From assembly GCF_032444005.1 (NCBI RefSeq), contig NC_091283.1, forward strand, positions 105,772,001 to 105,836,000: 64,000 bases of DNA, read 5' to 3'. Below the pieces are notes generated by a model. That model did no database searches and was not told where the DNA came from. It was given only the letters and a program-made list of their open reading frames with translations. Every line of letters begins with the position of its first letter. Within the stretch, counting starts at the first letter, position 1. This stretch comes from Ranitomeya imitator. Its lineage: Eukaryota. Position numbers and translations under genes: made by a program. This document shows, piece after piece, positions 34,206 to 50,712 of this stretch.

Positions 34206-37139
34206 GGGAAAATGGAAATAAATACATTTTTTTTTATTTTTCCCTAACTAAGGGGGTGATGAAGGGGGGTTTGATTTTCTTTTATAGTGAGTTTTTTAGC
34301 GGATTTTTATGATTGGCAGCCGTCACACACTGAAAGACCCTTTTTATTGCAAAAAATATTTTTTGCAATACCACATTTTGAGAGCTATAATTTTTCCATA
34401 TTTTGGTCCACAGAGTCATATGAGGTCTTGTTTTTTGCGGGACGAGTTGACGTTTTTATTGAAAACATTTTTGGGCACGTGACATTTTTTTTATCGCTTT
34501 TTATTCCGATTTTTGTGAGGAAGAATGACCAAAAGCCAGCTATTCATGAATTTCTATTGGGGGAGGCGTTTATACCGTTCCGCGTTTGGTAAAATTGATA
34601 AATCAGTTTTATTCTTCGGGTCAGTACGATTACAGCGATACCTCATTTATATCATTTTTTTATGGTTTGGTGCTTTTATACGATAAAAACTATTTTACAG
34701 AAAAAATAATTATTTTTGCATCGCTTTATTCTCAGGACTATAACTTTTTTATTTTTTTGCTGATGATGCTGTATGGCGGCTCTTTTTTTGCGGGACAATA
34801 TGACGCTTTCAGCGGTACCATGGTTATTTATATCTGTCCTTTTGATCGCGTGTTATTCCACTTTTTGTTCGGCGGTATGATAATAAAGCGTTGTTTTTTG
34901 CCTCGTTTTTTTTTTTTTCTTCTTACGGTGTTTACTGAAGGGGTTAACTAGTGGGACAGTTTTATAGGTTGGGTCGTTACGGACGCGGCGATACTAAATA
35001 TGTGTACTTTTATTGTTTTTTTTTTTTTATTTAGATGAAGAAATGTATTTATGGGAATAATATTTTTTTTTTTTTTTCATTATTTTGGAATATTTTTTTT
35101 AATTTTTTTTACACATTTGGAAAATTTTTTTTTTACTTTTTTACTTTGTCCCAGGGGGGGACATCACAGATCAGTGATCTGACAGTTTGCACAGCACTCT
35201 GTCAGATCACTGATCTGACATGCAGCGCTGCAGCCTTCACAGTGCCTGCTCTGAGCAGGCTCTGTGAAGCCACCTCCCTCCCTGCAGGACCCGGATCCGC
35301 GGCCATCTTGGATCCGGGGCTCGAGCAGGGAGGGAGGTGAGGAGACCCTCGCAGCAACGCGATCACATCGCGTTGCTGCGGGGGGCTCAGGGAAGCCCGC
35401 AGGGAGCCCCCTCCCTGCGCGGTGCTTCCCTGCACCGCCGGCACATCGCGATCATCTTTGATCGCGGTGTGCCAGGGGTTAATGTGCCGGGGGCGGTCCG
35501 TGACCGCTCCTGGCACATAGTGCCGGATGTCAGCTGCGATAAGCAGCTGACACCCGGCCGCGATCGGCCGCGCTCCCCCCGTGAGCGCGGCCGATCGGCT
35601 ATGACGTACTATCCCGTCCAGGGTCAGATAAGCCCAGGGCACCTCGACGGGATAGTACGTCTAAGGTCACAGAGGGGTTAAAGATTTTTCTGTATTTTCA
35701 TGACTATGTAAATTGTACATTCACACTGAAGGCATCAAAACTATGAATTAACACATGTGAAATTATATACTTGACAAAAAAGTGTGAAACAACTGAAATT
35801 ATGTTTTATATTCTAGGTTCTTCAAAGTAGCCACCTTTTGCTTTGATGACTGCTTTGCACACTCTTGGCATTCTCTTGAGGAGCTTCAAGAGGTAGTCTC
35901 CAGGAATGGTTTTCACTAGAGTTGAGCGACCTTGACCTTTTTAGAGTCGAGCCGGGTTTCGCGAAACCCGACTATCTCAAAAGTCGGGTCGAGTGAAATC
36001 GGCCGATTATGACGTAAAGTCGGGATCGACCGAAACACGAAACCCAATGCAAGTCAATGGGGCAGCATAGTCGGCAGTGAGTGGGGGCCAGGAAAACACC
36101 TAGAGTGCCCATTTTAATGTCAAAACCATCCATTCTTCTTAATGAAGCTTGTCAAGCGTAATTTACCTTATAATAATTGGAAGGCATTTGAAATTGGGGG
36201 TCATTTGGCTAAAGTTGTGGTGGGTAGGGCTGGTTCAAGTAATTAGTGGGCCCAGGAAATCTGGACCACGTCACGGCAGTGGAGCAGGGAGAGGTAAGTA
36301 TTTCAACTTTGCAAGTGCTGTGAACCTGAGCAAGCAGGGGGGGCCCACTCGTTGGCATTGGCACTGGCACAGGGCCCCTCAAAGTACAGCGGTGTGTTTG
36401 CACGGCGGGGGCGCCTCCCACCGGCAGCAACACTTTTGCGTACCATGAGAGGCCCTGTGCCAGTGACGTCGCCAACTAGTATTCCTCCCCCCACCTGATG
36501 AAGGAACCTGCACTTTCATCTGCACCTTCCTGTTTGTCCCCGTGTAAGGTGGTATGGTATGCGGGAAGGGGGACCTGACTTTCAGCAGGGTCACAATCTT
36601 GCAGTGTAGCGTGCACGGGAAATGTTGCGTTATGGGTCAATGTACCAGCAGACTCATCTATCACTGGCTGGGCAATGGGCAGGATGAGGAGGAAACACAG
36701 ATATAGGCCCAAAGAATAAAGTGGGCTAAATGCAGTTCAAAATTGGTAACACAGGACTAATCAGGGGGCATTGCAGTGGAGGACAACTGGAATGAGAGGC
36801 TGACACAGAGAGTAGGCCCAAATCAGTAAGTAGTCGAAATGCAGTTCAAAATTGGCAACAGTAGTAAACAGGCGGCACAGCTTTGTTCAGTGGAGGAGAA
36901 CAGCAAGGAGTGGCAGACACCGATAGTAGGCCCCAACCCAACTAGTAGGCCAAATGCAGTCTAACATTAACAACTACTTAATGAGCGCCTGAAAACGGAA
37001 TTTCAGGACAGGAAACCAGGAGAACAGCAAGGAGCGGCAGACACCGATAGTAGGCCCCAAACCAACTAGTACGCCAAATGCAGTTGTTCCGTTTAACCAC
37101 AATTTAATGAGAGCCTGAAGATAGAAGTTCAGGAAAGGC

Positions 37140-38395
37140 AACCTGGAGAACACCTTGGAGTGGAACACACCATCTCTCTACACCCCATACCCAATTTGTA
37201 GGTCTAATGCAGCGTAGTTTCCAACAACTACTAAACGAGAGCATGATGATCGAAGCATTGGCGAGGAAACCTGGGGAACACCTTGGAGTGGAACACACCA
37301 TCTCTCTACAGTGGAACACACCATCTCTCTACACCCCATACCCAATTTGTAGGCCTAATGCAGCGTAGTTTCCAACAACTACTAAACGAGAGCCGGAAGA
37401 TCGAAGCAATGGAGAGGAAACCTGGGGAACACCTTGGAGTGTAACACACCATCTCTCTACACCCCATACCCAATTTGTAGGCCTAATGCAGCGTAGTTTC
37501 CAACAACTACTAAACGAGAGCCGGAAGATCGAAGCAGTGGAGAGGAAACCTGGGGAACACCTTGGAGTGTAACACACCATCTCTCTACACCCCATACCCA
37601 ATTTGTAGGCCTAATGCAGCGTAGTTTCCAACAACTACTAAACGAGAGCCGGAAGATCGAAGCAATGGAGAGGAAACCTGGGGAACACCTTGGAGTGTAA
37701 CACACCATCTCTCTACACCCCATACCCAATTTGTAGGCCTAATGCAGCGTAGTTTCCAACAACTACTAAACGAGAGCCGGAAGATCGAAGCAATGGAGAG
37801 GAAACCTGGGGAACACCTTGGAGTGTAACACACCATCTCTCTACACCCCATACCCAATTTGTAGGCCTAATGCAGCGTAGTTTCCAACAACTACTAAACG
37901 AGAGCATGAAGATCGAAGCAATGGAGAGGAAACCTGGGGAACACCTAGGAGTGTAACACACCATCTCTCTACACCCCATACCCAATTTGTAGGCCTAATG
38001 CAGCGTAGTTTCCAACAACTACTAAACGAGAGCATGAAGATCGAAGCAATGGAGAGGAAACCTGGGGAACACCTTGGAGTGGAACACACCATCTCTCTAC
38101 ACCCCATACCCAATTTGTAGGCCTAATGCAGCGTAGTTTCCAACAACTACTAAACGAGAGCATGATGATCGAAGCATTGGCGAGGAAACCTGGGGAACAC
38201 CTTGGAGTGGAACACACCATCTCTCTACAGTGGAACACACCATCTCTCTACACCCCATACCCAATTTGTAGGCCTAATGTAGCGTAGTTTCCAACAACTA
38301 CTAAACGAGAGCCGGAAGATCGAAGCTCAGGAAAGGCAACCTGGGGAACACCTTGGAGTGGAACACACCATCTCTCTACACCCCATACCCAATTT
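37140..38395. repeat. 128-bp tandem array inside the hAT (~10 copies; resumes at 47671-47790 after the PLE)
   Basis: CCCCATACCCAATTTGTAGGCCTAATGCAGCG recurs with a 128-bp period. Confidence 0.95.
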
Positions 38396-38753
38396 TACTT
38401 ACAGGGAGAAACAAGAGTTTTCTTGGGTAAACAGTAAAAGGTCAAAATTTATTGATAGTTCACATTACATATCATAAATAATTTTCAAAGAACAATCAGA
38501 TAAAGTGATACATGTGCAGATACAATACCGGGGTAACCAGGAATCACCGGTTGCATTTGCCCCTTAGTGCAAAATAATCCATTTAGACATAAAGTGCATG
38601 TGCATTAGGGTATAGCACCAGTAAGTAGCCTTGCCCAGAATCGATCTTATATATATAGTAACAAGGGGTCTATATAATATAGTACCCTACAGGGCCGGTA
38701 CACACTTACCACGGGCAAACGCTGAAGGGGACCTGGGGCGGGTGTAGAAAAAG

Positions 38754-38797
38754 CCCGACGCGCGTTTCGCGTCTCCAATAGAACGCTTTCTCAAGGG
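38754..38797 (-). ncRNA. Minimal type I hammerhead ribozyme motif (inverted copy)
   Basis: Reverse complement of 47178-47221. Confidence 0.65.
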
Positions 38798-39509
38798 AAG
38801 TGAGAATAACATATGCAGGAGGACCTTTTAAGGTCAAAGAGTGCATCACATGCCCATCAAGGGCCAATCAAAGGTGGCCGAATAGCGGCGCATGCGCACC
38901 GCGTGTCACAGGTCCTGGCAGTGCAAAGGAGCGTCAACGTTACTGCGCACGCGCGGGGAGTAAATAATAATCCCCAGGCGTGCGAGCAAGGTAATAAGAC
39001 GCGCCGTCGCTCAGCAGGAATCCCGGGCACTGGCGCGCATGCGCACAGCCACTATATCACCAACGTAAAGAGGAGAAACCTCTACATTGCACCGGAAGTG
39101 CAGAAAACGTATAGTACCAAGTACGGTACCTAAGAGAAATTGAACATATATATGACATCATAAGAACCACAATATATCAATAATTATATCACAGATCACA
39201 AGTAACACAGTAATCAAGTTTAGTTCGATCCAAAAAGTGGTTCTCAGTCCATCAATTTCACATGATATTGTCTTGTGCATCTTCCGGCAGTTGATAAGTA
39301 GCACAGATGGTGACAGTTAGTATCCTGAATCCAAAATAGATGAAAGAAGGGGCCACAGACTTTTGAGGTCCCACTGCAAGGTTATAAATGTAACAGAATT
39401 ACACAAAACATAAAAAGAAATTAAAAACAATAAAAACATAGACACCCTAACCAAATGTCCATAGGACCATGACAGGAGCAAAAACCAATAGAATATAAGG
39501 AATAGATAA

Positions 39510-40808
39510 TCAGGATCCCAAAAATGAGGCAAAAGAAAGGGACTCATTCAGCCCCCTAGGGGTCAGTGTATCCAATAATGTGATCCATTTCGCCTCGACT
39601 TGTGCCAAGGTTTTCTTGTAGTCCCCCCCTCTTATACCAAGATGAATTACATCTATCCCCCTCACCTTAAATGAAGATGGTTCACAATTATGGTATTGTC
39701 TAAAGTGACGGGGGATGGTTTTGAGGAGGGTAACATCGGTCGCTGTCCTGGCCGCACAAATGTCCCGCACATGCTCCCGCACCCTTATTCTAAGCTCTCT
39801 TGAGGTGAGTCCCACGTAAATTTTGGAGCACCCACATGTAGCATAGTAGATCACATTTGTGCTGCTACAAGAGATCCGATGTCTTATATCATAAGTTTTT
39901 TTACCGTCTGAAGAACAGAAGGTAGAGCAGCGCAGGACATTTGTGCAGGCAAGACAGCGACCGCATGGTATGGATCCCAATGTTGGACCCCTAGAACTGA
40001 ATGGGTGCTTCGTGGTAGGCACATAATGGCTTTTTACAAGGAGATCCTTTAAATTTTTGGATCTCCGTGCAGTCATTAGGGGGTAATCACCCAAAGATGT
40101 TCCCAGGGAGGGCTCAGTATTCAAAATTGACCAGTGTTTAGAAAGGATCTGCCGCATATCCTCCCATTCATGATTGAATATTGATATAAACCGAATAGGT
40201 CCATTCTCGATTGTACGTGGCCGAGCCCTGGTAGCTTTGAGGAGATCGCCACGTGGAGTCGCCCGTGCCCTCCGATATCCTTGTTTGATGCACCGGTTAG
40301 AATAACCGCGTGCAGCAAATCTGGATTTAAGATCGGAGGCCTGTACTTCAAATTTTGCATCAGACGAACAGATCCGCCTCATCCGGAGGAACTGTCCGAC
40401 CGGGACGGCCCTAATAGTAGAGGAAATGTGAGCTGAGGACGCATGAATCAAAGAATTCACAGATGTCGGTTTACGATATACATCTGTTTGAATGGACCTA
40501 TCATGGTCCACTTCAAAGGTAACATCTAAAAAATTAACCCTCTTGACATCATAATTATAGGTCAAAAATATATTCAAAGGATTCCGATTCAGCGTCCCCA
40601 TAAATTCCTCGAGTTGCTGCACCGTCCCATCCCACAAAAAGAAAACATCATCCAAATACCTATGCCAGCACAGCACATGGGAGGCGGCCCGTGGGCCCTC
40701 GTCGCCAAAGATTGATCTCTCCCAGGCTCCCAAGAAGAGATTAGCATACGAGGGCGCACAGGCCGCGCCCATGGCTGTGCCACGCCTCTGTAAATAAAAA
40801 CAGTCCTT
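39510..40808 (-). pseudogene. 5'-truncated PLE ORF (RT C-terminal half + GIY-YIG), inverted copy
   Basis: Same protein as the 3' part of the full ORF except one R>H change (EVDHDR). Confidence 0.9.
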
Positions 40809-40823
40809 ATAGACAAAAAAAAA

Positions 40824-42122
40824 AAGGACTGTTTTTATTTACAGAGGCGTGGCACAGCCATGGGCGCGGCCTGTGCGCCCTCGTATGCTAATCTCTTCTT
40901 GGGAGCCTGGGAGAGATCAATCTTTGGCGACGAGGGCCCACGGGCCGCCTCCCATGTGCTGTGCTGGCATAGGTATTTGGATGATGTTTTCTTTTTGTGG
41001 GATGGGACGGTGCAGCAACTCGAGGAATTTATGGGGACGCTGAATCGGAATCCTTTGAATATATTTTTGACCTATAATTATGATGTCAAGAGGGTTAATT
41101 TTTTAGATGTTACCTTTGAAGTGGACCGTGATAGGTCCATTCAAACAGATGTATATCGTAAACCGACATCTGTGAATTCTTTGATTCATGCGTCCTCAGC
41201 TCACATTTCCTCTACTATTAGGGCCGTCCCGGTCGGACAGTTCCTCCGGATGAGGCGGATCTGTTCGTCTGATGCAAAATTTGAAGTACAGGCCTCCGAT
41301 CTTAAATCCAGATTTGCTGCACGCGGTTATTCTAACCGGTGCATCAAACAAGGATATCGGAGGGCACGGGCGACTCCACGTGGCGATCTCCTCAAAGCTA
41401 CCAGGGCTCGGCCACGTACAATCGAGAATGGACCTATTCGGTTTATATCAATATTCAATCATGAATGGGAGGATATGCGGCAGATCCTTTCTAAACACTG
41501 GTCAATTTTGAATACTGAGCCCTCCCTGGGAACATCTTTGGGTGATTACCCCCTAATGACTGCACGGAGATCCAAAAATTTAAAGGATCTCCTTGTAAAA
41601 AGCCATTATGTGCCTACCACGAAGCACCCATTCAGTTCTAGGGGTCCAACATTGGGATCCATACCATGCGGTCGCTGTCTTGCCTGCACAAATGTCCTGC
41701 GCTGCTCTACCTTCTGTTCTTCAGACGGTAAAAAAACTTATGATATAAGACATCGGATCTCTTGTAGCAGCACAAATGTGATCTACTATGCTACATGTGG
41801 GTGCTCCAAAATTTACGTGGGACTCACCTCAAGAGAGCTTAGAATAAGGGTGCGGGAGCATGTGCGGGACATTTGTGCGGCCAGGACAGCGACCGATGTT
41901 ACCCTCCTCAAAACCATCCCCCGTCACTTTAGACAATACCATAATTGTGAACCATCTTCATTTAAGGTGAGGGGGATAGATGTAATTCATCTTGGTATAA
42001 GAGGGGGGGACTACAAGAAAACCTTGGCACAAGTCGAGGCGAAATGGATCACATTATTGGATACACTGACCCCTAGGGGGCTGAATGAGTCCCTTTCTTT
42101 TGCCTCATTTTTGGGATCCTGA
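40824..42122 (+). pseudogene. 5'-truncated PLE ORF, direct partial copy
   Basis: 420-aa track ORF identical to the C-terminus of 43370-46465. Confidence 0.9.
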
Positions 42123-42834
42123 TTATCTATTCCTTATATTCTATTGGTTTTTGCTCCTGTCATGGTCCTATGGACATTTGGTTAGGGTGTCTATGTTTTT
42201 ATTGTTTTTAATTTCTTTTTATGTTTTGTGTAATTCTGTTACATTTATAACCTTGCAGTGGGACCTCAAAAGTCTGTGGCCCCTTCTTTCATCTATTTTG
42301 GATTCAGGATACTAACTGTCACCATCTGTGCTACTTATCAACTGCCGGAAGATGCACAAGACAATATCATGTGAAATTGATGGACTGAGAACCACTTTTT
42401 GGATCGAACTAAACTTGATTACTGTGTTACTTGTGATCTGTGATATAATTATTGATATATTGTGGTTCTTATGATGTCATATATATGTTCAATTTCTCTT
42501 AGGTACCGTACTTGGTACTATACGTTTTCTGCACTTCCGGTGCAATGTAGAGGTTTCTCCTCTTTACGTTGGTGATATAGTGGCTGTGCGCATGCGCGCC
42601 AGTGCCCGGGATTCCTGCTGAGCGACGGCGCGTCTTATTACCTTGCTCGCACGCCTGGGGATTATTATTTACTCCCCGCGCGTGCGCAGTAACGTTGACG
42701 CTCCTTTGCACTGCCAGGACCTGTGACACGCGGTGCGCATGCGCCGCTATTCGGCCACCTTTGATTGGCCCTTGATGGGCATGTGATGCACTCTTTGACC
42801 TTAAAAGGTCCTCCTGCATATGTTATTCTCACTT

Positions 42835-42878
42835 CCCTTGAGAAAGCGTTCTATTGGAGACGCGAAACGCGCGTCGGG
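42835..42878 (+). ncRNA. Minimal type I hammerhead ribozyme motif (upstream pLTR)
   Basis: CCC-TTGAGAA-A-GCGT(loop)ACGC-GAAA-CGCGC-GTC-GGG; predicted cut after 42875. Confidence 0.7.
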
Positions 42879-43229
42879 CTTTTTCTACACCCGCCCCAGG
42901 TCCCCTTCAGCGTTTGCCCGTGGTAAGTGTGTACCGGCCCTGTAGGGTACTATATTATATAGACCCCTTGTTACTATATATATAAGATCGATTCTGGGCA
43001 AGGCTACTTACTGGTGCTATACCCTAATGCACATGCACTTTATGTCTAAATGGATTATTTTGCACTAAGGGGCAAATGCAACCGGTGATTCCTGGTTACC
43101 CCGGTATTGTATCTGCACATGTATCACTTTATCTGATTGTTCTTTGAAAATTATTTATGATATGTAATGTGAACTATCAATAAATTTTGACCTTTTACTG
43201 TTTACCCAAGAAAACTCTTGTTTCTCCCT

Positions 43230-43352
43230 GTAAGTATGTTTGTTTGAGTGGGTATACTTTCTTTTTGTATGGGCTAATTTTAGCCTTCTATGCTGACAGA
43301 ATTATGTCAAAGAGGTTGTGGTGGCTACTAATTATTTCTGTGTTTTTCACAG
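43230..43352 (+). other. Predicted 123-nt spliceosomal intron in the PLE leader
   Basis: GTAAGT donor at 43230; TACTAAT branch-like motif at 43326-43332; pyrimidine tract; CAG at 43350-43352. Confidence 0.7.
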
Positions 43353-43369
43353 TGGACCTCTATGGTAAT

Positions 43370-46300
43370 ATGGATTTCCGTGCGCGCGATCAGACGTGGC
43401 GCGCACTAATTAATGATACTGTGCAGGATGATGCAGAGGGTTGTTCGGTGGGATCTGACAGGAGCATACAAGATGCTATTAACAAATTTAAAGATCTATT
43501 AAGGAGACGGACACGTATTTGGTGGAACCATGCGTTCCTAGAGAAATATATACAAAAAGATCTGATACCCCGAGGTTTACGGGTGCAGGTCTTCCCATCC
43601 TTTCCTGTTGAAGACGAAACATTTAAAAACAAGTGGGAAACCTTGACTAACACATGCTCTAGAGGTTTCCTGGAACTCCTGAAAAATATGAACCAGGATT
43701 CCCTGACCTCTTTGGAGGTCGAAATTGAGGAGTTACAGGTTATTCTACGTAGGGATATGACGACTGACGCCCTCAAAAAGCTAAATGAGGAGATGGACTC
43801 GCTCTCCCAAAAATGGGCGAATGAAATCCAGACTACGAAAAGTAAGAAATTTCAGAGGGATGTGGAAGATAAGAGGCTCTCACGGATCTATAGGTGGCGG
43901 AGTGGTAATGATCGGTCTAGGCCACAATTTAGAAATTCGTCATATTCAAGGTCACGATCGACATCCGCTAGATCTAATATTTCAGGAGAGGAGGAGATGG
44001 TATCTAAAAACACCAAACTGAGTGGGACTTCGGGAGGCACATCAAGTTATAAACGGACAACGAGACAGATTGTTAAATCTAAGGCCAACACAGGGGCATC
44101 ATCCGATTCCCAGGGGGGGCTCCAGGTAGTTAATCTATCATCCTATCAACTTACAGATGTTCAGTTACAACTCTTATCTAAGGGATTATCTTTTTCTCCT
44201 ACTAACTCATTTCATTATTTTACAGCTATAAAGGATCTGCACTTATTCTCCCGGAAGCTTCTATTAAAGAAATTACATCAGAAAAAGAATTTTTGTGAAC
44301 CCATGACTGAGATCGAGAGGGAGGCTCTCCAGAATCTGGAGGATCTTCTGGATGAACAGGTTGGTTCAGACACCAATAAATTTCCTACTTCATCCTTACC
44401 CAGATCTACCAGGTTCCCCCCCTTGTCTCTGAGCCCGGCGATTGAGGTCTTCACTAGATGTGTTAGTGAGGACTTCAAGAAACTTTCAACAAGGAGACGT
44501 TATGATAATTTGACACATAAGGAACGCCTGGCTTTATCTCAATTACAATCTTTGCCTGATATTGTCTTTAAATCAGCAGACAAGGGGGGGAACATTGTGA
44601 TCTGGCCTCAGGATAAATACGAGCGTGAGGCCCTCAGACAATTGAGGAACCCCGACACATACTCCAGATTATCCTGCAGTCCTCTGGTTGGCTTCTCTCT
44701 CGATCTACAGGGCATTTTGGTCCGAGCCTTGGACAGAGATGTTATTACTAAACAGGTGTTAGAGGGTCTAACGGTGAAATTCCCTAAAATTCCAACCTTC
44801 TACCTGTTACCTAAGATCCACAAGAATGCCCTCGACCCCCCAGGGCGTCCCATTGTGTCTGGCATCGGGGGTCTCTGCAATCCGATCTGTCAATTCATTG
44901 ACTTTTACCTTAAACCCCTAGTGGAGACATTACCGTCATATGTACGGGACACAACGGACGCCCTGGCGAGGGTTGACGGCATTCTTGTGGACCATGATAC
45001 TTTGATGGTGACCGCCGACGTGGAGAGCCTTTACACTTGTATTGACCATCAACATGGCATGGAGGCAGTCCGCCTCTTCCTGGGGGCCTCCGACCGTGAC
45101 GGCCCTTTATGCGATTTTATCCTCGAGTTGCTGCACTATGTCCTTACCCATAATTTTTTTGTCTATAAGGACTGTTTTTATTTACAGAGGCGTGGCACAG
45201 CCATGGGCGCGGCCTGTGCGCCCTCGTATGCTAATCTCTTCTTGGGAGCCTGGGAGAGATCAATCTTTGGCGACGAGGGCCCACGGGCCGCCTCCCATGT
45301 GCTGTGCTGGCATAGGTATTTGGATGATGTTTTCTTTTTGTGGGATGGGACGGTGCAGCAACTCGAGGAATTTATGGGGACGCTGAATCGGAATCCTTTG
45401 AATATATTTTTGACCTATAATTATGATGTCAAGAGGGTTAATTTTTTAGATGTTACCTTTGAAGTGGACCGTGATAGGTCCATTCAAACAGATGTATATC
45501 GTAAACCGACATCTGTGAATTCTTTGATTCATGCGTCCTCAGCTCACATTTCCTCTACTATTAGGGCCGTCCCGGTCGGACAGTTCCTCCGGATGAGGCG
45601 GATCTGTTCGTCTGATGCAAAATTTGAAGTACAGGCCTCCGATCTTAAATCCAGATTTGCTGCACGCGGTTATTCTAACCGGTGCATCAAACAAGGATAT
45701 CGGAGGGCACGGGCGACTCCACGTGGCGATCTCCTCAAAGCTACCAGGGCTCGGCCACGTACAATCGAGAATGGACCTATTCGGTTTATATCAATATTCA
45801 ATCATGAATGGGAGGATATGCGGCAGATCCTTTCTAAACACTGGTCAATTTTGAATACTGAGCCCTCCCTGGGAACATCTTTGGGTGATTACCCCCTAAT
45901 GACTGCACGGAGATCCAAAAATTTAAAGGATCTCCTTGTAAAAAGCCATTATGTGCCTACCACGAAGCACCCATTCAGTTCTAGGGGTCCAACATTGGGA
46001 TCCATACCATGCGGTCGCTGTCTTGCCTGCACAAATGTCCTGCGCTGCTCTACCTTCTGTTCTTCAGACGGTAAAAAAACTTATGATATAAGACATCGGA
46101 TCTCTTGTAGCAGCACAAATGTGATCTACTATGCTACATGTGGGTGCTCCAAAATTTACGTGGGACTCACCTCAAGAGAGCTTAGAATAAGGGTGCGGGA
46201 GCATGTGCGGGACATTTGTGCGGCCAGGACAGCGACCGATGTTACCCTCCTCAAAACCATCCCCCGTCACTTTAGACAATACCATAATTGTGAACCATCT

Positions 46301-46465
46301 TCATTTAAGGTGAGGGGGATAGATGTAATTCATCTTGGTATAAGAGGGGGGGACTACAAGAAAACCTTGGCACAAGTCGAGGCGAAATGGATCACATTAT
46401 TGGATACACTGACCCCTAGGGGGCTGAATGAGTCCCTTTCTTTTGCCTCATTTTTGGGATCCTGA
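43370..46465 (+). CDS. PLE polyprotein (1031 aa from the ATG at 43370): N-terminal domain, RT, Cys linker, GIY-YIG endonuclease
   Basis: Uninterrupted frame; motifs LIPRGLR, GRPIVS, TADVESLYT, GTAMGAACAPSYANLF, RYLDD, PCGRCLAC (Neptune-type linker) and VIY...YVG..R....R..EH. The track ORF extends upstream to 43187 without a likely start. Confidence 0.93.
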   Translation: MDFRARDQTWRALINDTVQDDAEGCSVGSDRSIQDAINKFKDLLRRRTRIWWNHAFLEKYIQKDLIPRGLRVQVFPSFPVEDETFKNKWETLTNTCSRGFLELLKNMNQDSLTSLEVEIEELQVILRRDMTTDALKKLNEEMDSLSQKWANEIQTTKSKKFQRDVEDKRLSRIYRWRSGNDRSRPQFRNSSYSRSRSTSARSNISGEEEMVSKNTKLSGTSGGTSSYKRTTRQIVKSKANTGASSDSQGGLQVVNLSSYQLTDVQLQLLSKGLSFSPTNSFHYFTAIKDLHLFSRKLLLKKLHQKKNFCEPMTEIEREALQNLEDLLDEQVGSDTNKFPTSSLPRSTRFPPLSLSPAIEVFTRCVSEDFKKLSTRRRYDNLTHKERLALSQLQSLPDIVFKSADKGGNIVIWPQDKYEREALRQLRNPDTYSRLSCSPLVGFSLDLQGILVRALDRDVITKQVLEGLTVKFPKIPTFYLLPKIHKNALDPPGRPIVSGIGGLCNPICQFIDFYLKPLVETLPSYVRDTTDALARVDGILVDHDTLMVTADVESLYTCIDHQHGMEAVRLFLGASDRDGPLCDFILELLHYVLTHNFFVYKDCFYLQRRGTAMGAACAPSYANLFLGAWERSIFGDEGPRAASHVLCWHRYLDDVFFLWDGTVQQLEEFMGTLNRNPLNIFLTYNYDVKRVNFLDVTFEVDRDRSIQTDVYRKPTSVNSLIHASSAHISSTIRAVPVGQFLRMRRICSSDAKFEVQASDLKSRFAARGYSNRCIKQGYRRARATPRGDLLKATRARPRTIENGPIRFISIFNHEWEDMRQILSKHWSILNTEPSLGTSLGDYPLMTARRSKNLKDLLVKSHYVPTTKHPFSSRGPTLGSIPCGRCLACTNVLRCSTFCSSDGKKTYDIRHRISCSSTNVIYYATCGCSKIYVGLTSRELRIRVREHVRDICAARTATDVTLLKTIPRHFRQYHNCEPSSFKVRGIDVIHLGIRGGDYKKTLAQVEAKWITLLDTLTPRGLNESLSFASFLGS

Positions 46466-47177
46466 TTATCTATTCCTTATATTCTATTGGTTTTTGCTCC
46501 TGTCATGGTCCTATGGACATTTGGTTAGGGTGTCTATGTTTTTATTGTTTTTAATTTCTTTTTATGTTTTGTGTAATTCTGTTACATTTATAACCTTGCA
46601 GTGGGACCTCAAAAGTCTGTGGCCCCTTCTTTCATCTATTTTGGATTCAGGATACTAACTGTCACCATCTGTGCTACTTATCAACTGCCGGAAGATGCAC
46701 AAGACAATATCATGTGAAATTGATGGACTGAGAACCACTTTTTGGATCGAACTAAACTTGATTACTGTGTTACTTGTGATCTGTGATATAATTATTGATA
46801 TATTGTGGTTCTTATGATGTCATATATATGTTCAATTTCTCTTAGGTACCGTACTTGGTACTATACGTTTTCTGCACTTCCGGTGCAATGTAGAGGTTTC
46901 TCCTCTTTACGTTGGTGATATAGTGGCTGTGCGCATGCGCGCCAGTGCCCGGGATTCCTGCTGAGCGACGGCGCGTCTTATTACCTTGCTCGCACGCCTG
47001 GGGATTATTATTTACTCCCCGCGCGTGCGCAGTAACGTTGACGCTCCTTTGCACTGCCAGGACCTGTGACACGCGGTGCGCATGCGCCGCTATTCGGCCA
47101 CCTTTGATTGGCCCTTGATGGGCATGTGATGCACTCTTTGACCTTAAAAGGTCCTCCTGCATATGTTATTCTCACTT

Positions 47178-47221
47178 CCCTTGAGAAAGCGTTCTATTGG
47201 AGACGCGAAACGCGCGTCGGG
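47178..47221 (+). ncRNA. Minimal type I hammerhead ribozyme motif (downstream pLTR)
   Basis: Same sequence as 42835-42878, 4343 nt downstream; predicted cut after 47218. Confidence 0.7.
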
Positions 47222-48253
47222 CTTTTTCTACACCCGCCCCAGGTCCCCTTCAGCGTTTGCCCGTGGTAAGTGTGTACCGGCCCTGTAGGGTACTATATTA
47301 TATAGACCCCTTGTTACTATATATATAAGATCGATTCTGGGCAAGGCTACTTACTGGTGCTATACCCTAATGCACATGCACTTTATGTCTAAATGGATTA
47401 TTTTGCACTAAGGGGCAAATGCAACCGGTGATTCCTGGTTACCCCGGTATTATATCTGCACATGTATCACTTTATCTGATTGTTCTTTGAAAATTATTTA
47501 TGATATGTAATGTGAACTATCAATAAATTTTGACCTTTTACTGTTTACCCAAGAAAACTCTTGTTTCTCCCTGTAAGTATGTTTGTTTGAGTGGGTATAC
47601 TTTCTTTTTGTATGGGCTAATTTTAGCCTTCTATGCTGACAGAATTATGTCAAAGAGGTTGTGGTGGCTACCCATACCCAATTTGTAGGCCCAATGCAGC
47701 GTAGTTTCCAACAACTACTAAACGAGAGCCGGAAGATCGAAGCTCAGGAAAGGCAACCTGGGGAACACCTTGGAGTGTAACAAACCCTCTCTCTACACCA
47801 CGGAAGGGCTGATTCTTAGGAAGGAAGGCTGTCGGAAAGAAGCAGGGCGCATCCGAGGGTGATTATATTCTTATTAGGTATATACTCACCCTCGGACGCG
47901 CCCTGCTTCTTTATTTGTAATGAATGTTTATTTGCAATGTGGTTTTGACTTACTCTATTTTTTTGGTAAATAATGATTTTATTATTTTCATTGTTTTGCA
48001 TCTTCTTGGCAATAATATAAAGAAGACGCGACAGGACAACACTCGGTGGATGCCATATCTGTGTTTAAAATTGAAAAAACCTTTCAGTTAACTACTTGCA
48101 GGAGAAAGTTATTGTAGCTGGTGGCCATTTTTAGTACTGTACCAGATTTTTGTTGTATGTGTTTGTTTTTAATGTTAAAATGTCTGCATTTGATATCTCT
48201 CCAGTATTTTCTTTTTTATAAGCAACATACTTATTTTTATATTTTCTGATGTT

Positions 48254-50243
48254 GGTTCCAGGGGTACACGGGCAGCAGTGGTGTGGTCAGTGGAGGCCTA
48301 GTGGAAGGAGTGACCGCAGACAGGCATCGAAGGCCTAAAATAATAACACATGGCTGTAGGCAATTTTAAATTGGTTACAGGGGTACACGGGCAGCAGTGG
48401 TGTGGTCAGTGGAGGCCTAGTGGAAGGAGTTACCGCAGACAGGCATCGAAGGCCTAAAATAATAACACATGGCTGTAGGCAATTTTAAATTGGTTCCAGG
48501 GGTACACGGGCAGCAGTGGTGTGGTCAGTGGAGGCCTAGTGGAAGGAGTGACCGCAGACAGGCATCGAAGGCCTAAAATAATAACACATGGCTGTAGGCA
48601 ATTTTAAATTGGTTCCAGGGGTACACGGGCAGCAGTGGTGTGGTCAGTGGAGGCCTAGTGGAAGGAGTGACCGCAGACAGGCATCGAAGGCCTAAAATAA
48701 TAACACATGGCTGTAGGCAATTTTAAATTGGTTACAGGGGTACACGGGCAGCAGTGGTGTGGTCAGTGGAGGCCTAGTGGAAGGAGTCACCGCAGACAGG
48801 CATCGAAGGCCTAAAATAATAACACATGGCTGTAGGCAATTTTAAATTGGTTCCAGGGGTACACGGGCAGCAGTGGTGTGGTCAGTGGAGGCCTAGTGGA
48901 AGGAGTGACCGCAGACAGGCATCGAAGGCCTAAAATAATAACACATGGCTGTAGGCAATTTTAAATTGGTTCCAGGGGTACACGGGCAGCAGTGGTGTGG
49001 TCAGTGGAGGCCTAGTGGAAGGAGTGACCGCAGACAGGCATCGAAGGCCTAAAATAATAACACATGGCTGTAGGCAATTTTAAATTGGTTCCAGGGGTAC
49101 ACGGGCAGCAGTGGTGTGGTCAGTGGAGGCCTAGTGGAAGGAGTGACCGCAGACAGGCATCGAAGGCCTAAAATAATAACACATGGCTGTAGGCAATTTT
49201 AAACTGGTTCCAGGGGTACACGGGCAGCAGTGGTGTGGTCAGTGGAGGCCTATTGGAAGGAGTGACCGCAGACAGGCATCGAAGGCCTAAAATAATAACA
49301 CATGGCTGTAGGCAATTTTAAATTGGTTACAGGGGTACACGGGCAGCAGTGGTGTGGTCAGTGGAGGCCTAGTGGAAGGAGTGACCGCAGACAGGCATCG
49401 AAGGCCTAAAATAATAACACATGGCTGTAGGCAATTTTAAATTGGTTCCAGGGGTACACGGGCAGCAGTGGTGTGGTCAGTGGAGGCCTAGTGGAAGGAG
49501 TGACCGCAGACAGGCATCGAAGGCCTAAAATAATAACACATGGCTGTAGGCAATTTTAAATTGGTTCCAGGGGTACACGGGCAGCAGTGGTGTGGTCAGT
49601 GGAGGCCTAGTGGAAGGAGTGACCGCAGACAGGCATCGAAGGCCTAAAATAATAACACATGGCTGTAGGCAATTTTAAATTGGTTACAGGGGTACACGGG
49701 CAGCAGTGGTGTGGTCAGTGGAGGCCTAGTGGAAGGAGTGACCGCAGACAGGCATCGAAGGCCTAAAATAATAACACATGGCTGTAGGCAATTTTAAATT
49801 GGTTCCAGGGGTACACGGGCAGCAGTGGTGTGGTCAGTGGAGGCCTAGTGGAAGGAGTGACCGCAGACAGGCATCGAAGGCCTAAAATAATAACACATGG
49901 CTGTAGGCAATTTTAAATTGGTTCCAGGGGTACACGGGCAGCAGTGGTGTGGTCAGTGGAGGCCTAGTGGAAGGAGTGACCGCAGACAGGCATCGAAGGC
50001 CTAAAATAATAACACATGGCTGTAGGCAATTTTAAATTGGTTACAGGGGTACACGGGCAGCAGTGGTGTGGTCAGTGGAGGCCTAGTGGAAGGAGTGACC
50101 GCAGACAGGCATCGAAGGCCTAAAATAATAACACATGGCTGTAGGCAATTTTAAATTGGTTCCAGGGGTACACGGGCAGCAGTGGTGTGGTCAGTGGAGG
50201 CCTAGTGGAAGGAGTGACCACAGACAGGCATCGAAGGCCTAAC
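48254..50243. repeat. 119-bp tandem array, ~17 near-identical copies, inside the hAT
   Basis: CAGGGGTACACGGGCAGCAG recurs at an exact 119-bp period from 48260 to 50164. Confidence 0.97.
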
Positions 50244-50712
50244 ATAACAAAAATGTCAATACAATGGTATTGTCAGTGGCAGGCATTGAAGGATGTCAGC
50301 GCATAGACTAAACATTGGTGGAGCTGTGAGATAATTTTGCAAGTGGTAGAGCACTGTTTGAGCTGGGGTGGGGGGAAACTGTCTTGTGGCTGGCGGTACA
50401 GGCCCAGGGCCCCTCATATTACAACGGTGTGTCTGACGTTGGGTGCGCACCACCACCGCCAGAGACACTTTATTGTACTAGGAGGGACCCAGTGGCAGTG
50501 CCGTCGACCAAAAGCGGGCTCACCCACCTCTTCAGACAAACTGCACTCTCATGGGTGCTGTCGCCAAGTGTCGATACCACGGCCCCGTGTGGGGAGTTTG
50601 GCCATTTAGTGAGGTGTAAACATGTCGTATGCTGGACAATCAGGTGCAGAAAATTACGAGATTGGAAAAGGCATTCAGAATAGTCCACAGGCAAGACCTT
50701 TTCATAGGAAAG

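What the first reader, a model, noticed from the sequence alone, without database searches (positions are those of the whole stretch)
42835..47221. Two variant hammerheads exactly one unit apart could excise a 4343-nt PLE monomer (candidate circular RNA intermediate)
Seen: CCC-TTGAGAA-A-GCGT..ACGC-GAAA-CGCGC-GTC-GGG at 42835, 47178 and inverted at 38754. The core reads U3 U4 G5 A6 G7 A8 A9, so the canonical C3-G8 tertiary pair is swapped for U3-A8. There is an extra A before stem II, only 3 bp of stem I, and a 2-bp stem III whose ACGCGCGT segment is self-complementary. Known: minimal hammerheads occur in PLE pLTRs and can act as dimers via palindromic stem III. Inference: double cleavage releases 42876-47218, which contains the whole intron and ORF. 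The insertion's 3' end lies 452 nt beyond the cut site and the copy runs 1.58 units. Both facts fit reverse transcription around a circularised monomer, retrozyme-style, although an uncleaved read-through transcript of a tandem donor would also explain them. A CUGANGA motif search would miss this ribozyme.
Basis: partly seen in the sequence, partly recalled or inferred. Interest (0 to 1): 0.8.

Follow-up and report, generated by a model that had tools for sequence, protein, structure and literature searches.

The report
Known-type minimal hammerhead in frog Penelope element
The repeated 44-base motif is a real but already described kind of small self-cutting RNA motif (a minimal hammerhead with a swapped core base pair) in the terminal repeats of a very young Penelope-like jumping gene; the proposed circular RNA intermediate is an old published hypothesis that this locus neither proves nor refutes.

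Summary
**Observation:** confirmed. An identical 44-nt motif sits at 42835(+), 47178(+) and 38754(-). The two sense copies are exactly one 4343-bp unit apart. They lie inside a Penelope-like element (PLE) inserted into a 128-bp satellite as an inverted partial arm plus 1.58 tandem units.

**Identity:** the motif fits the published PLE "minimal type I hammerhead" class point by point:
- canonical core, apart from a U3-A8 pair;
- one extra nucleotide before helix II;
- a G10.1-C11.1 pair;
- a palindromic helix III;
- a 3-bp helix I.

Rfam finds nothing, but it also misses canonical-core PLE hammerheads. A covariance model trained only on unrelated PLE loci ranks the three window copies first (17.6 bits, E about 0.004). 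Across 86 PLE loci, positions 3/8 are CG 24 times, UA 5 times, UG once, and never anything else.

**Novelty:** low. The U3-A8 variant, the extra nucleotide, action as a dimer, and the model of a circular RNA template for more-than-unit reverse transcription were all published in 2014 (PMC4209133).

**Mechanism:** later biochemistry (PMC11167929) favours an uncleaved RNA template with internal initiation. Contigs in RNA-labelled runs cross the cut site intact. The circle model is untested here.

The scan noted the same kind of motif on another piece of this genome (s1-279639).

The parts
42835..42878 (+). Minimal type I hammerhead motif, sense copy 1. Layout: helix I CCC/GGG; core U3 U4 G5 A6 G7 A8 A9; unpaired A; helix II GCGUU/GACGC with an 8-nt loop; G12 A13 A14; palindromic helix III segment ACGCGCGU; C17 = 42875. 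The predicted cut is between 42875 and 42876.
   Evidence: Covariance model R2, trained on unrelated PLE loci, scores it 17.6 bits with E about 0.004.
47178..47221 (+). Hammerhead motif, sense copy 2, identical to copy 1 and exactly 4343 bp downstream. The predicted cut is between 47218 and 47219.
38754..38797 (-). Hammerhead motif in the inverted partial arm. It is sense only on the minus strand.
38396..40821 (-). Inverted partial PLE copy. It is the reverse complement of unit positions 45154-47579. It differs from unit 2 at two bases. At the 43109/47452 position it carries the unit-1 base.
40824..45166 (+). First complete 4343-bp period of the direct copy. Order of parts: 3' part of the ORF, pLTR with the hammerhead, leader intron, 5' part of the ORF.
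45167..47671 (+). Second, partial period (2505 bp), with one mismatch to the first (47452 A versus 43109 G). It ends inside the leader intron, 452-453 nt past the second hammerhead cut site.
43370..46465 (+). Intact PLE ORF of 1031 aa. [quoted passage not shown] The best relatives are PLE proteins of dendrobatid frogs (64-70% identity).
43230..43352 (+). Putative retained leader intron: GTAAGT donor, CTAAT branch-like site, pyrimidine tract and CAG acceptor, just upstream of the ATG at 43370. It has not been verified with RNA.
Evidence: sequence only.
42820..42849 (+). Competing hairpin A (UUCUCA/UGAGAA plus extension). It sequesters the first catalytic box in the monomer minimum-free-energy fold.
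42859..42875 (+). Competing hairpin B (GACGCG/CGCGUC). It sequesters the 3' strand of helix II, GAAA and the cleavage triplet in the monomer minimum-free-energy fold.
38382..38395 (.). Left copy of the 13-14 bp duplicated target (CCCATACCCAATTT) within the 128-bp satellite. The right copy is at 47671/47672-47684.

Best explanation
**Identity.** The motif belongs to the known class of minimal type I hammerheads carried in the pseudo-LTRs of Penelope-like elements. It has the U3-A8 covariant core.

**Why two copies one unit apart.** PLEs insert as partial tandems, so two sense copies a unit apart is the normal layout. Here the insertion is an inverted arm plus 1.58 units, all made in one very recent event.

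**Likely action of the RNA.**
- As a monomer, the RNA prefers two hairpins that mask both catalytic boxes.
- The 8-nt palindrome ACGCGCGU lets two copies form a double hammerhead. The two copies could lie on one multimeric transcript or on two transcripts.
- This suggests weak cleavage that depends on a dimer or on a protein, as published for other PLE hammerheads.

**Template of this insertion (inferred).** The template was most probably an uncleaved RNA longer than one unit. Reverse transcription began internally in the pLTR, inside the leader intron, about 452 nt 3' of the cut site. It ran through two intact hammerhead sites and then folded back to give the inverted arm.

**Shown versus inferred.** Shown: the anatomy, class membership by comparison, and covariation within the class. 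Inferred: catalysis, action as a dimer, and the nature of the template.
For: **Conserved positions.** Every conserved hammerhead position other than the 3/8 pair is canonical: U4 G5 A6, A9, G12 A13 A14, A15.1-U16.1, C17 and G10.1-C11.1.

**Independent PLE loci (86 loci, 363 kb).**
- The same architecture occurs 30 times on the ORF strand, 0 times on the other strand, and 0.1 times in shuffles.
- 26 of the 30 have the extra nucleotide before helix II.
- N3/N8 is CG 24 times, UA 5 times and UG once, with none of the 13 other combinations (Fisher p = 4e-5).
- L071 carries the identical heptamer UUGAGAA.

**Covariance model.** R2, built only from those loci, ranks the three window copies first (17.6 bits, E about 0.004). 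The next best hit scores 11.4 bits at E 0.63.

**Class covariation.** 99% of cells are paired, and 9 of 10 pairs show compensatory changes.

**Phylogeny.** UA-core elements are scattered among CG-core ones on the RT tree.

**Folding energies.** The double hammerhead is -28.3 kcal/mol against -26.8 for two monomer minimum-free-energy folds. The monomer hammerhead fold is -5.1 against a minimum of -13.4.

**Literature.**
- PMC4209133 describes the U3-A8 variant, the extra nucleotide, the palindromic helix III, and low activity seen only in dimers.
- PMC11167929 shows internal initiation, unprocessed RNA as the substrate, and no RNA-seq ends at the cut site.

**RNA libraries.** Five RNA-labelled runs hold all sampled 31-mers across the cut site.
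Against: - There is no cleavage assay and no read-level RNA data for this sequence.
- Rfam hammerhead models give no hit even on a 121-nt search. They also miss canonical-core PLE hammerheads, so this weighs little.
- The covariance-model E-value is modest and rough.
- The nearest-neighbour model disfavours the active fold, and the dimer minimum-free-energy fold (-34.3 kcal/mol) is not the double hammerhead.
- All three copies are identical, so this element family itself offers no covariation.
- Closer frog relatives could not be fetched.
- The RNA label on the runs is a guess, and contaminating DNA could explain contigs that cross the cut site.
Confidence: 0.72

Rival explanations
1. The two hammerheads cut a multimeric transcript, the 4343-nt monomer is ligated into a circle, and the PLE reverse transcriptase copies 1.58 laps of that circle into the target, in the manner of a retrozyme.
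For: - The insertion is longer than one unit and crosses the cut site twice on the + strand. A linear processed monomer cannot template that.
- The two laps differ at only 1 of 2505 bases.
- The palindromic helix III allows a double hammerhead.
- The model is explicitly proposed in the literature (PMC4209133 and PMC6765202).
- Animal retrozymes with related pLTR-derived hammerheads do make circular RNAs (PMC7229834, listed; 2026 preprint).
Against: - A religated junction leaves no scar, so nothing in the DNA distinguishes a circle from an uncleaved tandem read-through.
- In vitro, a PLE uses unprocessed RNA, ribozyme-dead mutants insert equally well, and no RNA-seq ends map to the cut site (PMC11167929).
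- PLE min-hammerheads cleave very poorly in vitro.
- RNA-labelled runs hold contigs that cross the cut site intact.
- The 3' end inside the intron fits the published internal-initiation "tail" without needing a circle.
Confidence: 0.1
2. The motif keeps hammerhead-like sequence but does not cleave in vivo. It would act instead as a structured pLTR element, for example the two stable hairpins or a binding site for the element's own protein. Alternatively it is simply a neutral relic inherited with the pLTR.
For: - The monomer minimum-free-energy fold masks both catalytic boxes, and the hammerhead fold is 8 kcal/mol worse.
- Helix I is only 3 bp.
- Published PLE min-hammerheads have very low protein-free activity, and the authors themselves left open functions other than self-cleavage.
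- In Anolis, cleavage needed the protein and was dispensable for insertion.
Against: - Every catalytic position is intact in a very young element.
- Across PLEs the 3/8 pair covaries (CG, UA, UG only), and G10.1-C11.1 is invariant. Those constraints make sense for a catalytic core rather than for a generic hairpin.
- The motif occurs only on the sense strand.
Confidence: 0.15
3. The inverted-plus-tandem arrangement, and with it the "two hammerheads one unit apart", is an assembly artefact of a multi-copy repeat.
For: The arms are about 100% identical. The family is highly multi-copy in the DNA run (2084 contigs laid).
Against: - The structure sits between in-register satellite flanks with a 13-14 bp target duplication.
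- The three copies carry two singleton differences.
- An inverted arm with a partial tandem is the classic PLE insertion form.
Confidence: 0.03

Closest known systems
PLE minimal hammerheads (min-HHR) of Cervera & de la Pena 2014, in particular the U3-A8 covariant found in Schistosoma Cercyon PLEs
   Same: - Type I topology, located in the pLTR on the sense strand.
- U3-A8 in place of C3-G8.
- An unpaired nucleotide between A9 and G10.1.
- A G10.1-C11.1 pair.
- A short helix I.
- A palindromic 15.x/16.x segment that implies a dimer.
- Two copies one unit apart in tandem PLEs.
   Different: - The host is an anuran, and the PLE is of the clade with a GIY-YIG endonuclease.
- The palindrome is longer (8 nt including A15.1/U16.1).
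- Helix I is only 3 bp.
- Two GC-rich alternative hairpins compete with the active fold.
- Activity of this sequence has not been tested.
Poseidon PLE of Anolis carolinensis (PAc; Frangieh et al. 2024)
   Same: - An autonomous RT plus GIY-YIG PLE in tandem repeats, with a hammerhead in the pLTR.
- The 3' boundary of the insertion lies at an internal site of the RNA (the "tail"), which fits the end at 47670/47671.
   Different: - PAc has a canonical C3-G8 core that overlaps its start codon.
- Here the motif lies about 490 nt upstream of the ATG and is separated from it by a putative intron.
- There is no biochemistry for this element.
Metazoan non-LTR retrozymes (small circRNAs with type I hammerheads)
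   Same: Type I hammerheads with a weak, palindromic helix III occur in tandem repeats. They are thought to depend on PLE machinery and to derive from pLTRs.
   Different: Retrozymes are short, non-coding and non-autonomous, and they demonstrably accumulate as circular RNA. This unit is 4343 nt and encodes the full RT-EN protein. No circle has been shown.
Rfam Hammerhead_1 / Hammerhead_3 / HH9 / HH10 / Hammerhead_II models
   Same: They share the catalytic boxes and the three-helix junction.
   Different: There is no hit at E<=10. The models expect a real helix III and longer helices I and II, and they also miss canonical-core PLE min-hammerheads.

Membership tests
PLE minimal type I hammerhead | Conserved catalytic positions: U4 G5 A6, A9, G12 A13 A14, A15.1-U16.1 and H17 | tested here: met
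   Read directly from the sequence: UUGAGAA ... GAAA ... U C. C17 is at 42875 and 47218.
PLE minimal type I hammerhead | Watson-Crick pair between positions 3 and 8 (C-G, or the published U-A covariant) | tested here: met
   The window has U3-A8. In 30 motifs from independent PLE loci the pair is CG 24, UA 5 and UG 1, with no other combination. The U3-A8 covariant is published in PMC4209133.
PLE minimal type I hammerhead | An unpaired nucleotide between A9 and G10.1, and a G10.1-C11.1 closing pair | tested here: met
   The extra A is present, followed by G...C. 26 of 30 relatives have the extra nucleotide. G-C is invariant in 22 of 22 distinct rows.
PLE minimal type I hammerhead | Helix II of at least 4 bp and a short helix I | tested here: met
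   Helix II is GCGUU/GACGC (4 Watson-Crick pairs plus 1 wobble). Helix I is CCC/GGG, 3 bp. Relatives have 3-7 bp.
PLE minimal type I hammerhead | A minimal, palindromic helix III that allows a double-hammerhead dimer | tested here: met
   ACGCGCGU is self-complementary, with a duplex energy of -13.3 kcal/mol. The nested double-hammerhead structure evaluates to -28.3 kcal/mol.
PLE minimal type I hammerhead | Located in the pLTR of a PLE, on the strand of the RT ORF | tested here: met
   All three copies lie in the non-coding repeat, about 490 nt upstream of the ATG and about 710 nt downstream of the stop codon, on the ORF strand of their own arm.
PLE minimal type I hammerhead | Recognised by a structure and sequence profile built from other members | tested here: met
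   Model R2, trained without the window, places the three copies as the top hits at 17.6 bits and E about 0.004 (a rough value). The next best hit is at E 0.63.
PLE minimal type I hammerhead | Self-cleavage at H17, as a dimer or with protein | not testable with these tools
   This needs in vitro transcription or RNA end mapping. Only assembled contigs were available.
Rfam hammerhead families (RF00163, RF00008, RF02275-7) | Score at or near the family's gathering threshold | tested here: not met
   No hammerhead hit at E<=10 on either the 16-kb or the 121-nt search. The same negative result holds for the canonical-core PLE motifs in L002, L003 and L004.
Penelope-like element (endonuclease-containing) | [quoted passage not shown] | tested here: met
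   - The ORF 43370-46465 has the ADKGGN, APSYAN and YxDD-type motifs and a GIY-YIG-like C-terminus.
- 410 homologues at E<=1e-20 carry the same precomputed PLE-associated Pfam families, and four of the best 120 also carry GIY-YIG (PF01541).
- The tandem and inverted anatomy is documented.
Retrozyme / circRNA-producing ribozyme element | A unit-length circular RNA accumulates | not testable with these tools
   No read-level RNA data were available. In a tandem locus, contigs cannot distinguish circles from tandem read-through.
Retrozyme / circRNA-producing ribozyme element | A non-autonomous, non-coding unit | tested here: not met
   The unit encodes an intact 1031-aa RT-EN protein.

The most novel reading that the evidence does not exclude
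This very young, fully intact frog PLE really does use its U3-A8 double hammerhead to excise a coding 4.3-kb monomer. The monomer is ligated into a circle and copied by rolling reverse transcription. That would make it an autonomous, protein-coding counterpart of retrozymes and would explain why PLEs insert as more-than-unit tandems.
Probability: 0.1. Interest if true: 0.8.

Novelty: new member of a known kind. Interest (0 to 1): 0.27.

Why it matters
The biological role of the hammerheads that every PLE carries is still unsettled. Two ideas compete: processing and circularisation on one side, and a dispensable or protein-assisted element on the other.

This locus adds no new principle. It does offer a clean test object:
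- an intact ORF;
- three identical ribozyme copies;
- a defined target duplication;
- an insertion that provably crossed three uncut ribozyme sites.

The survey made here gives independent support that the PLE motif is under selection as a catalytic core. In 86 PLE loci the 3/8 pair is only ever CG, UA or UG, and UA cores are scattered across the RT tree. The survey also shows that Rfam-based annotation systematically misses this class.

Tried and rejected
- **Rfam.** cmscan at E<=10 on 16 kb and on 121 nt gave no hammerhead. I rejected this as evidence against the motif, because canonical-core PLE motifs in L002, L003 and L004 are missed as well.
- **Closest frog PLE loci.** I tried to fetch loci from Ranitomeya, Dendrobates and Anomaloglossus (54-70% protein identity) to look for covariation within the family. 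No DNA was served.
- **Read laying on two RNA-labelled runs, one unlabelled run and one DNA run.**
  - Only Logan contigs were returned, so there is no read-level information on ends.
  - The two RNA runs chosen had no contig over the motif.
  - The "goes back 4301" joints merely reflect how the stretch was cut relative to the 4343-bp unit. They are not circle junctions.
- **MAFFT alignments of the motifs.** These misplaced gaps in helix II and helix III, so I did not use them for structure.
- **First covariance model R1.** With five near-identical sequences it was overfitted, and the window motif was not among its hits up to E 10. It served only to seed the structural alignment for R2.
- **treekit.** The treekit build call did not return. 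I replaced it with MAFFT plus FastTree, for which branch support was not assessed.
- **Other copies in the window.** A BLAST of the unit against the rest of the window found none.
- **Literature.** A search for kinetic data on C3U/G8A double mutants found nothing usable. Lunse et al. 2017 is not held in the library.

Full report
**1. What is in the sequence**

None were found in 100 shuffles.

The surrounding anatomy is one composite insertion, 38396-47671.
- An inverted partial arm, 38396-40821, is the reverse complement of unit positions 45154-47579.
- Two bases separate it from a direct copy, 40824-47671. That copy spans 6848 bp, or 1.577 periods of 4343 bp.
- The two direct laps differ at one base (43109 G, 47452 A).
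- The inverted arm carries the unit-1 base at that position and has one private change at the 45471-equivalent position.
- The insertion sits in a 128-bp satellite whose register continues across it.
- A 13-14 bp duplicated target, CCCATACCCAATTT, lies at 38382-38395 and at 47671/2-47684.

The unit encodes an intact 1031-aa protein (43370-46465). It has Penelope-type reverse-transcriptase motifs and a GIY-YIG-like C-terminus. The best database relatives are PLE proteins of dendrobatid and other frogs, at 64-70% identity for the closest. The host is therefore most likely an anuran.

A GT..AG leader intron is plausible at 43230-43352 from sequence alone.

C17 is 42875 and 47218, the would-be monomer is 42876-47218, and the + copy ends 452-453 nt past the second cut.

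**2. Is the motif a hammerhead?**

Read as a type I hammerhead, the motif has these parts:
- helix I, CCC/GGG (3 bp);
- core U3 U4 G5 A6 G7 A8 A9;
- one unpaired A;
- helix II, GCGUU/GACGC, closed by G10.1-C11.1;
- G12 A13 A14;
- an ACGCGCGU segment, in which A15.1 and U16.1 are the outermost bases;
- C17.

Every invariant core position except the 3/8 pair is canonical.

Rfam 15 gives no hammerhead hit, even at E<=10 on a 121-nt search. I tested whether that silence means anything. Contigs encoding related PLE proteins (L002, L003, L004) carry motifs of identical architecture with a canonical CUGANGA box, and Rfam misses those too. Rfam silence is therefore uninformative for this class.

*Descriptor search.* I scanned 86 independent PLE loci (363 kb; 6 fetched through protein hits and 80 from a metagenome scan). 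The descriptor fixes only these features:
- U4 G5 A6 and A9;
- GAAA;
- U16.1-H17;
- helix II of at least 4 bp;
- helix I of at least 3 bp;
- a palindromic inner helix III.

Positions 3 and 8 were left free.
- It finds 30 motifs on the ORF strand, none on the opposite strand, and 0.1 in shuffles.
- In the window it finds only the three reported sites.
- Positions 3/8 are CG in 24 motifs, UA in 5 and UG in 1. None of the other 13 combinations occurs (Fisher p = 4e-5 on all hits, 4e-4 on distinct sequences).
- One locus, L071, has the same heptamer UUGAGAA as the window.
- 26 of the 30 carry the extra nucleotide before helix II.

*Covariance model.* I built a model iteratively from these relatives only (R1, then alignment A6, then R2). 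R2 ranks the three window copies first in the whole 64-kb window on both strands. They score 17.6 bits at E about 0.004, with rough calibration. The next hit scores 11.4 bits at E 0.63.

*Covariation in the training alignment.* 99% of cells are paired, 9 of 10 pairs show compensatory changes, and G10.1-C11.1 is invariant. All slid-register controls collapse. One caveat applies: the alignment is fitted to the model.

*Phylogeny.* On a quick FastTree of the PLE ORFs, the UA-core elements, including the window's, are scattered among CG-core ones. The single U.G case lies in the sister clade of a UA case (branch support not assessed).

I conclude that the motif is a member of the PLE minimal hammerhead class.

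**3. How it probably works**

Thermodynamic prediction does not favour an active monomer.
- The hammerhead fold of the 44-mer is -5.1 kcal/mol, against a minimum free energy of -13.4.
- Two hairpins, 42820-42849 and 42859-42875, mask both catalytic boxes.
- The palindrome allows a nested double hammerhead of two copies at -28.3 kcal/mol. That is comparable to two monomer minimum-free-energy folds (-26.8), but it is not the dimer minimum (-34.3).

This matches what is published for the class. Single motifs show no detectable cleavage, and dimers show weak cleavage, mostly at non-physiological Mg2+ concentrations (PMC4209133). For an Anolis PLE, cleavage occurs only when the element's protein is present (PMC11167929).

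Catalysis by this particular sequence is inferred, not shown.

**4. The circular-RNA inference**

The insertion crosses an intact hammerhead site three times: twice on the + copy and once on the inverted arm. A linear, doubly cleaved monomer therefore cannot have been the template. That much follows from the sequence.

A circle and an uncleaved read-through transcript of a tandem donor make the same prediction for the DNA, because religation restores GUC|GGG without a scar. The single difference between laps, and the private change in the inverted arm, are compatible with either reverse-transcriptase error or donor heterogeneity.

External evidence leans towards the uncleaved template.
- In vitro, the Anolis PLE initiates reverse transcription at an internal site of an unprocessed RNA.
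- Ribozyme-dead mutants insert equally well.
- No RNA-seq ends were found at the cut site.
- The 3' end here, inside the leader intron, looks like such an internal initiation point.

In this organism, five runs labelled as RNA, from two studies, hold all six sampled 31-mers of 42830-42925. That means contigs cross the cut site uncut. The label is a guess and DNA carry-over is possible.

Read-level ends could not be examined. The served data were assembled contigs, and the two RNA runs I laid had no contig over the motif.

The inverted arm shares the unit-1 base at the one position where the two laps differ. This fits a fold-back copy of the nascent first unit and needs no second template. That reading is inference.

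**5. Comparison with what is known**

- the U3-A8 covariation;
- the G10.1-C11.1 pair;
- the short helix I;
- the palindromic helix III and action as a dimer.

The same paper also proposed that ligated circular RNAs could template more-than-unit reverse transcription and so explain the tandem arrangement. The 2019 review PMC6765202 repeats this model. A 2026 preprint links animal retrozymes to PLE pLTRs, with Xenopus as the worked example.

The element is not a retrozyme, because it is autonomous and coding.

The finding is therefore a new member of a known kind, and the mechanism proposed for it is a known, still untested hypothesis. The scan has also noted the same kind of motif on another piece of this genome (s1-279639).

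**6. Verdict**
- Observation: confirmed.
- Identification as a PLE minimal hammerhead: well supported by comparison.
- Circular intermediate: neither supported nor excluded, and less likely than an uncleaved template.
- Interest: low to moderate. The main value is as a clean substrate for the decisive experiments, and as a reminder that Rfam-based annotation misses this class.

Noticed in passing
window 37031-38528 and 47671-47799: A 128-bp satellite array hosts the PLE insertion, and its register continues across the insertion. Some spacings are 151 bp (128 + 23). No hammerhead-like motif was found in it by the descriptor or by model R2.
   Followed up: partly
window 48133-50337: About 18 copies of a 119-bp tandem repeat at 98-100% identity, with a strong positive GC skew (0.30 in the 48-50 kb bin). 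Model R1 gave only spurious 11-bit hits there.
   Followed up: no
window 40771-40859: The fold-back junction between the inverted and direct arms forms a near-perfect hairpin with an A11/T11 loop. This is what produces the sub-threshold Rfam mir-1303 hit (50 bits against a gathering score of 107). It is an artefact of the inverted repeat, not a miRNA.
   Followed up: partly
window 47829-47925: An inverted-repeat hairpin of about 83 nt just outside the insertion gives sub-threshold hits to several plant MIR families on both strands. It is probably part of a repeat or a small inverted-repeat element.
   Followed up: no
window 42820-42875: Two stable hairpins (UUCUCA/UGAGAA and GACGCG/CGCGUC) sequester both catalytic boxes of the hammerhead in the monomer fold. 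They could be a built-in off-state that only dimerisation or a protein relieves, or simply a by-product of the CG-rich helices.
   Followed up: partly
window 38523, 43109, 47452 and 41128/45471: The inverted arm shares G with unit 1 at the one site where units 1 and 2 differ, and it has one private change. This fits a fold-back copy of unit 1 rather than a second independent cDNA.
   Followed up: partly
L025:3346-3386: A PLE min-hammerhead with a U3.G8 wobble. On the quick RT tree it lies in the sister clade of the UA-core element L071. It may be an intermediate on the path from C-G to U-A.
   Followed up: partly
loci L016, L023, L030, L036, L040, L043, L044, L046, L048, L051, L053, L054, L056, L060, L063, L064, L066, L069, L070, L074, L079, L085, L086: A large clade of metagenomic PLEs (record prefix JGI858J16261) has no descriptor or R1 hit, although several contigs have over 1 kb of flank. 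Their pLTR ribozyme, if there is one, must have a different shape.
   Followed up: no
window 42729-42878 (run X3): A contig from a related subfamily matches up to the last base of the hammerhead (42878) and then continues with a visibly homologous but much more divergent sequence. The motif and about 100 nt upstream of it seem better conserved than what follows.
   Followed up: no
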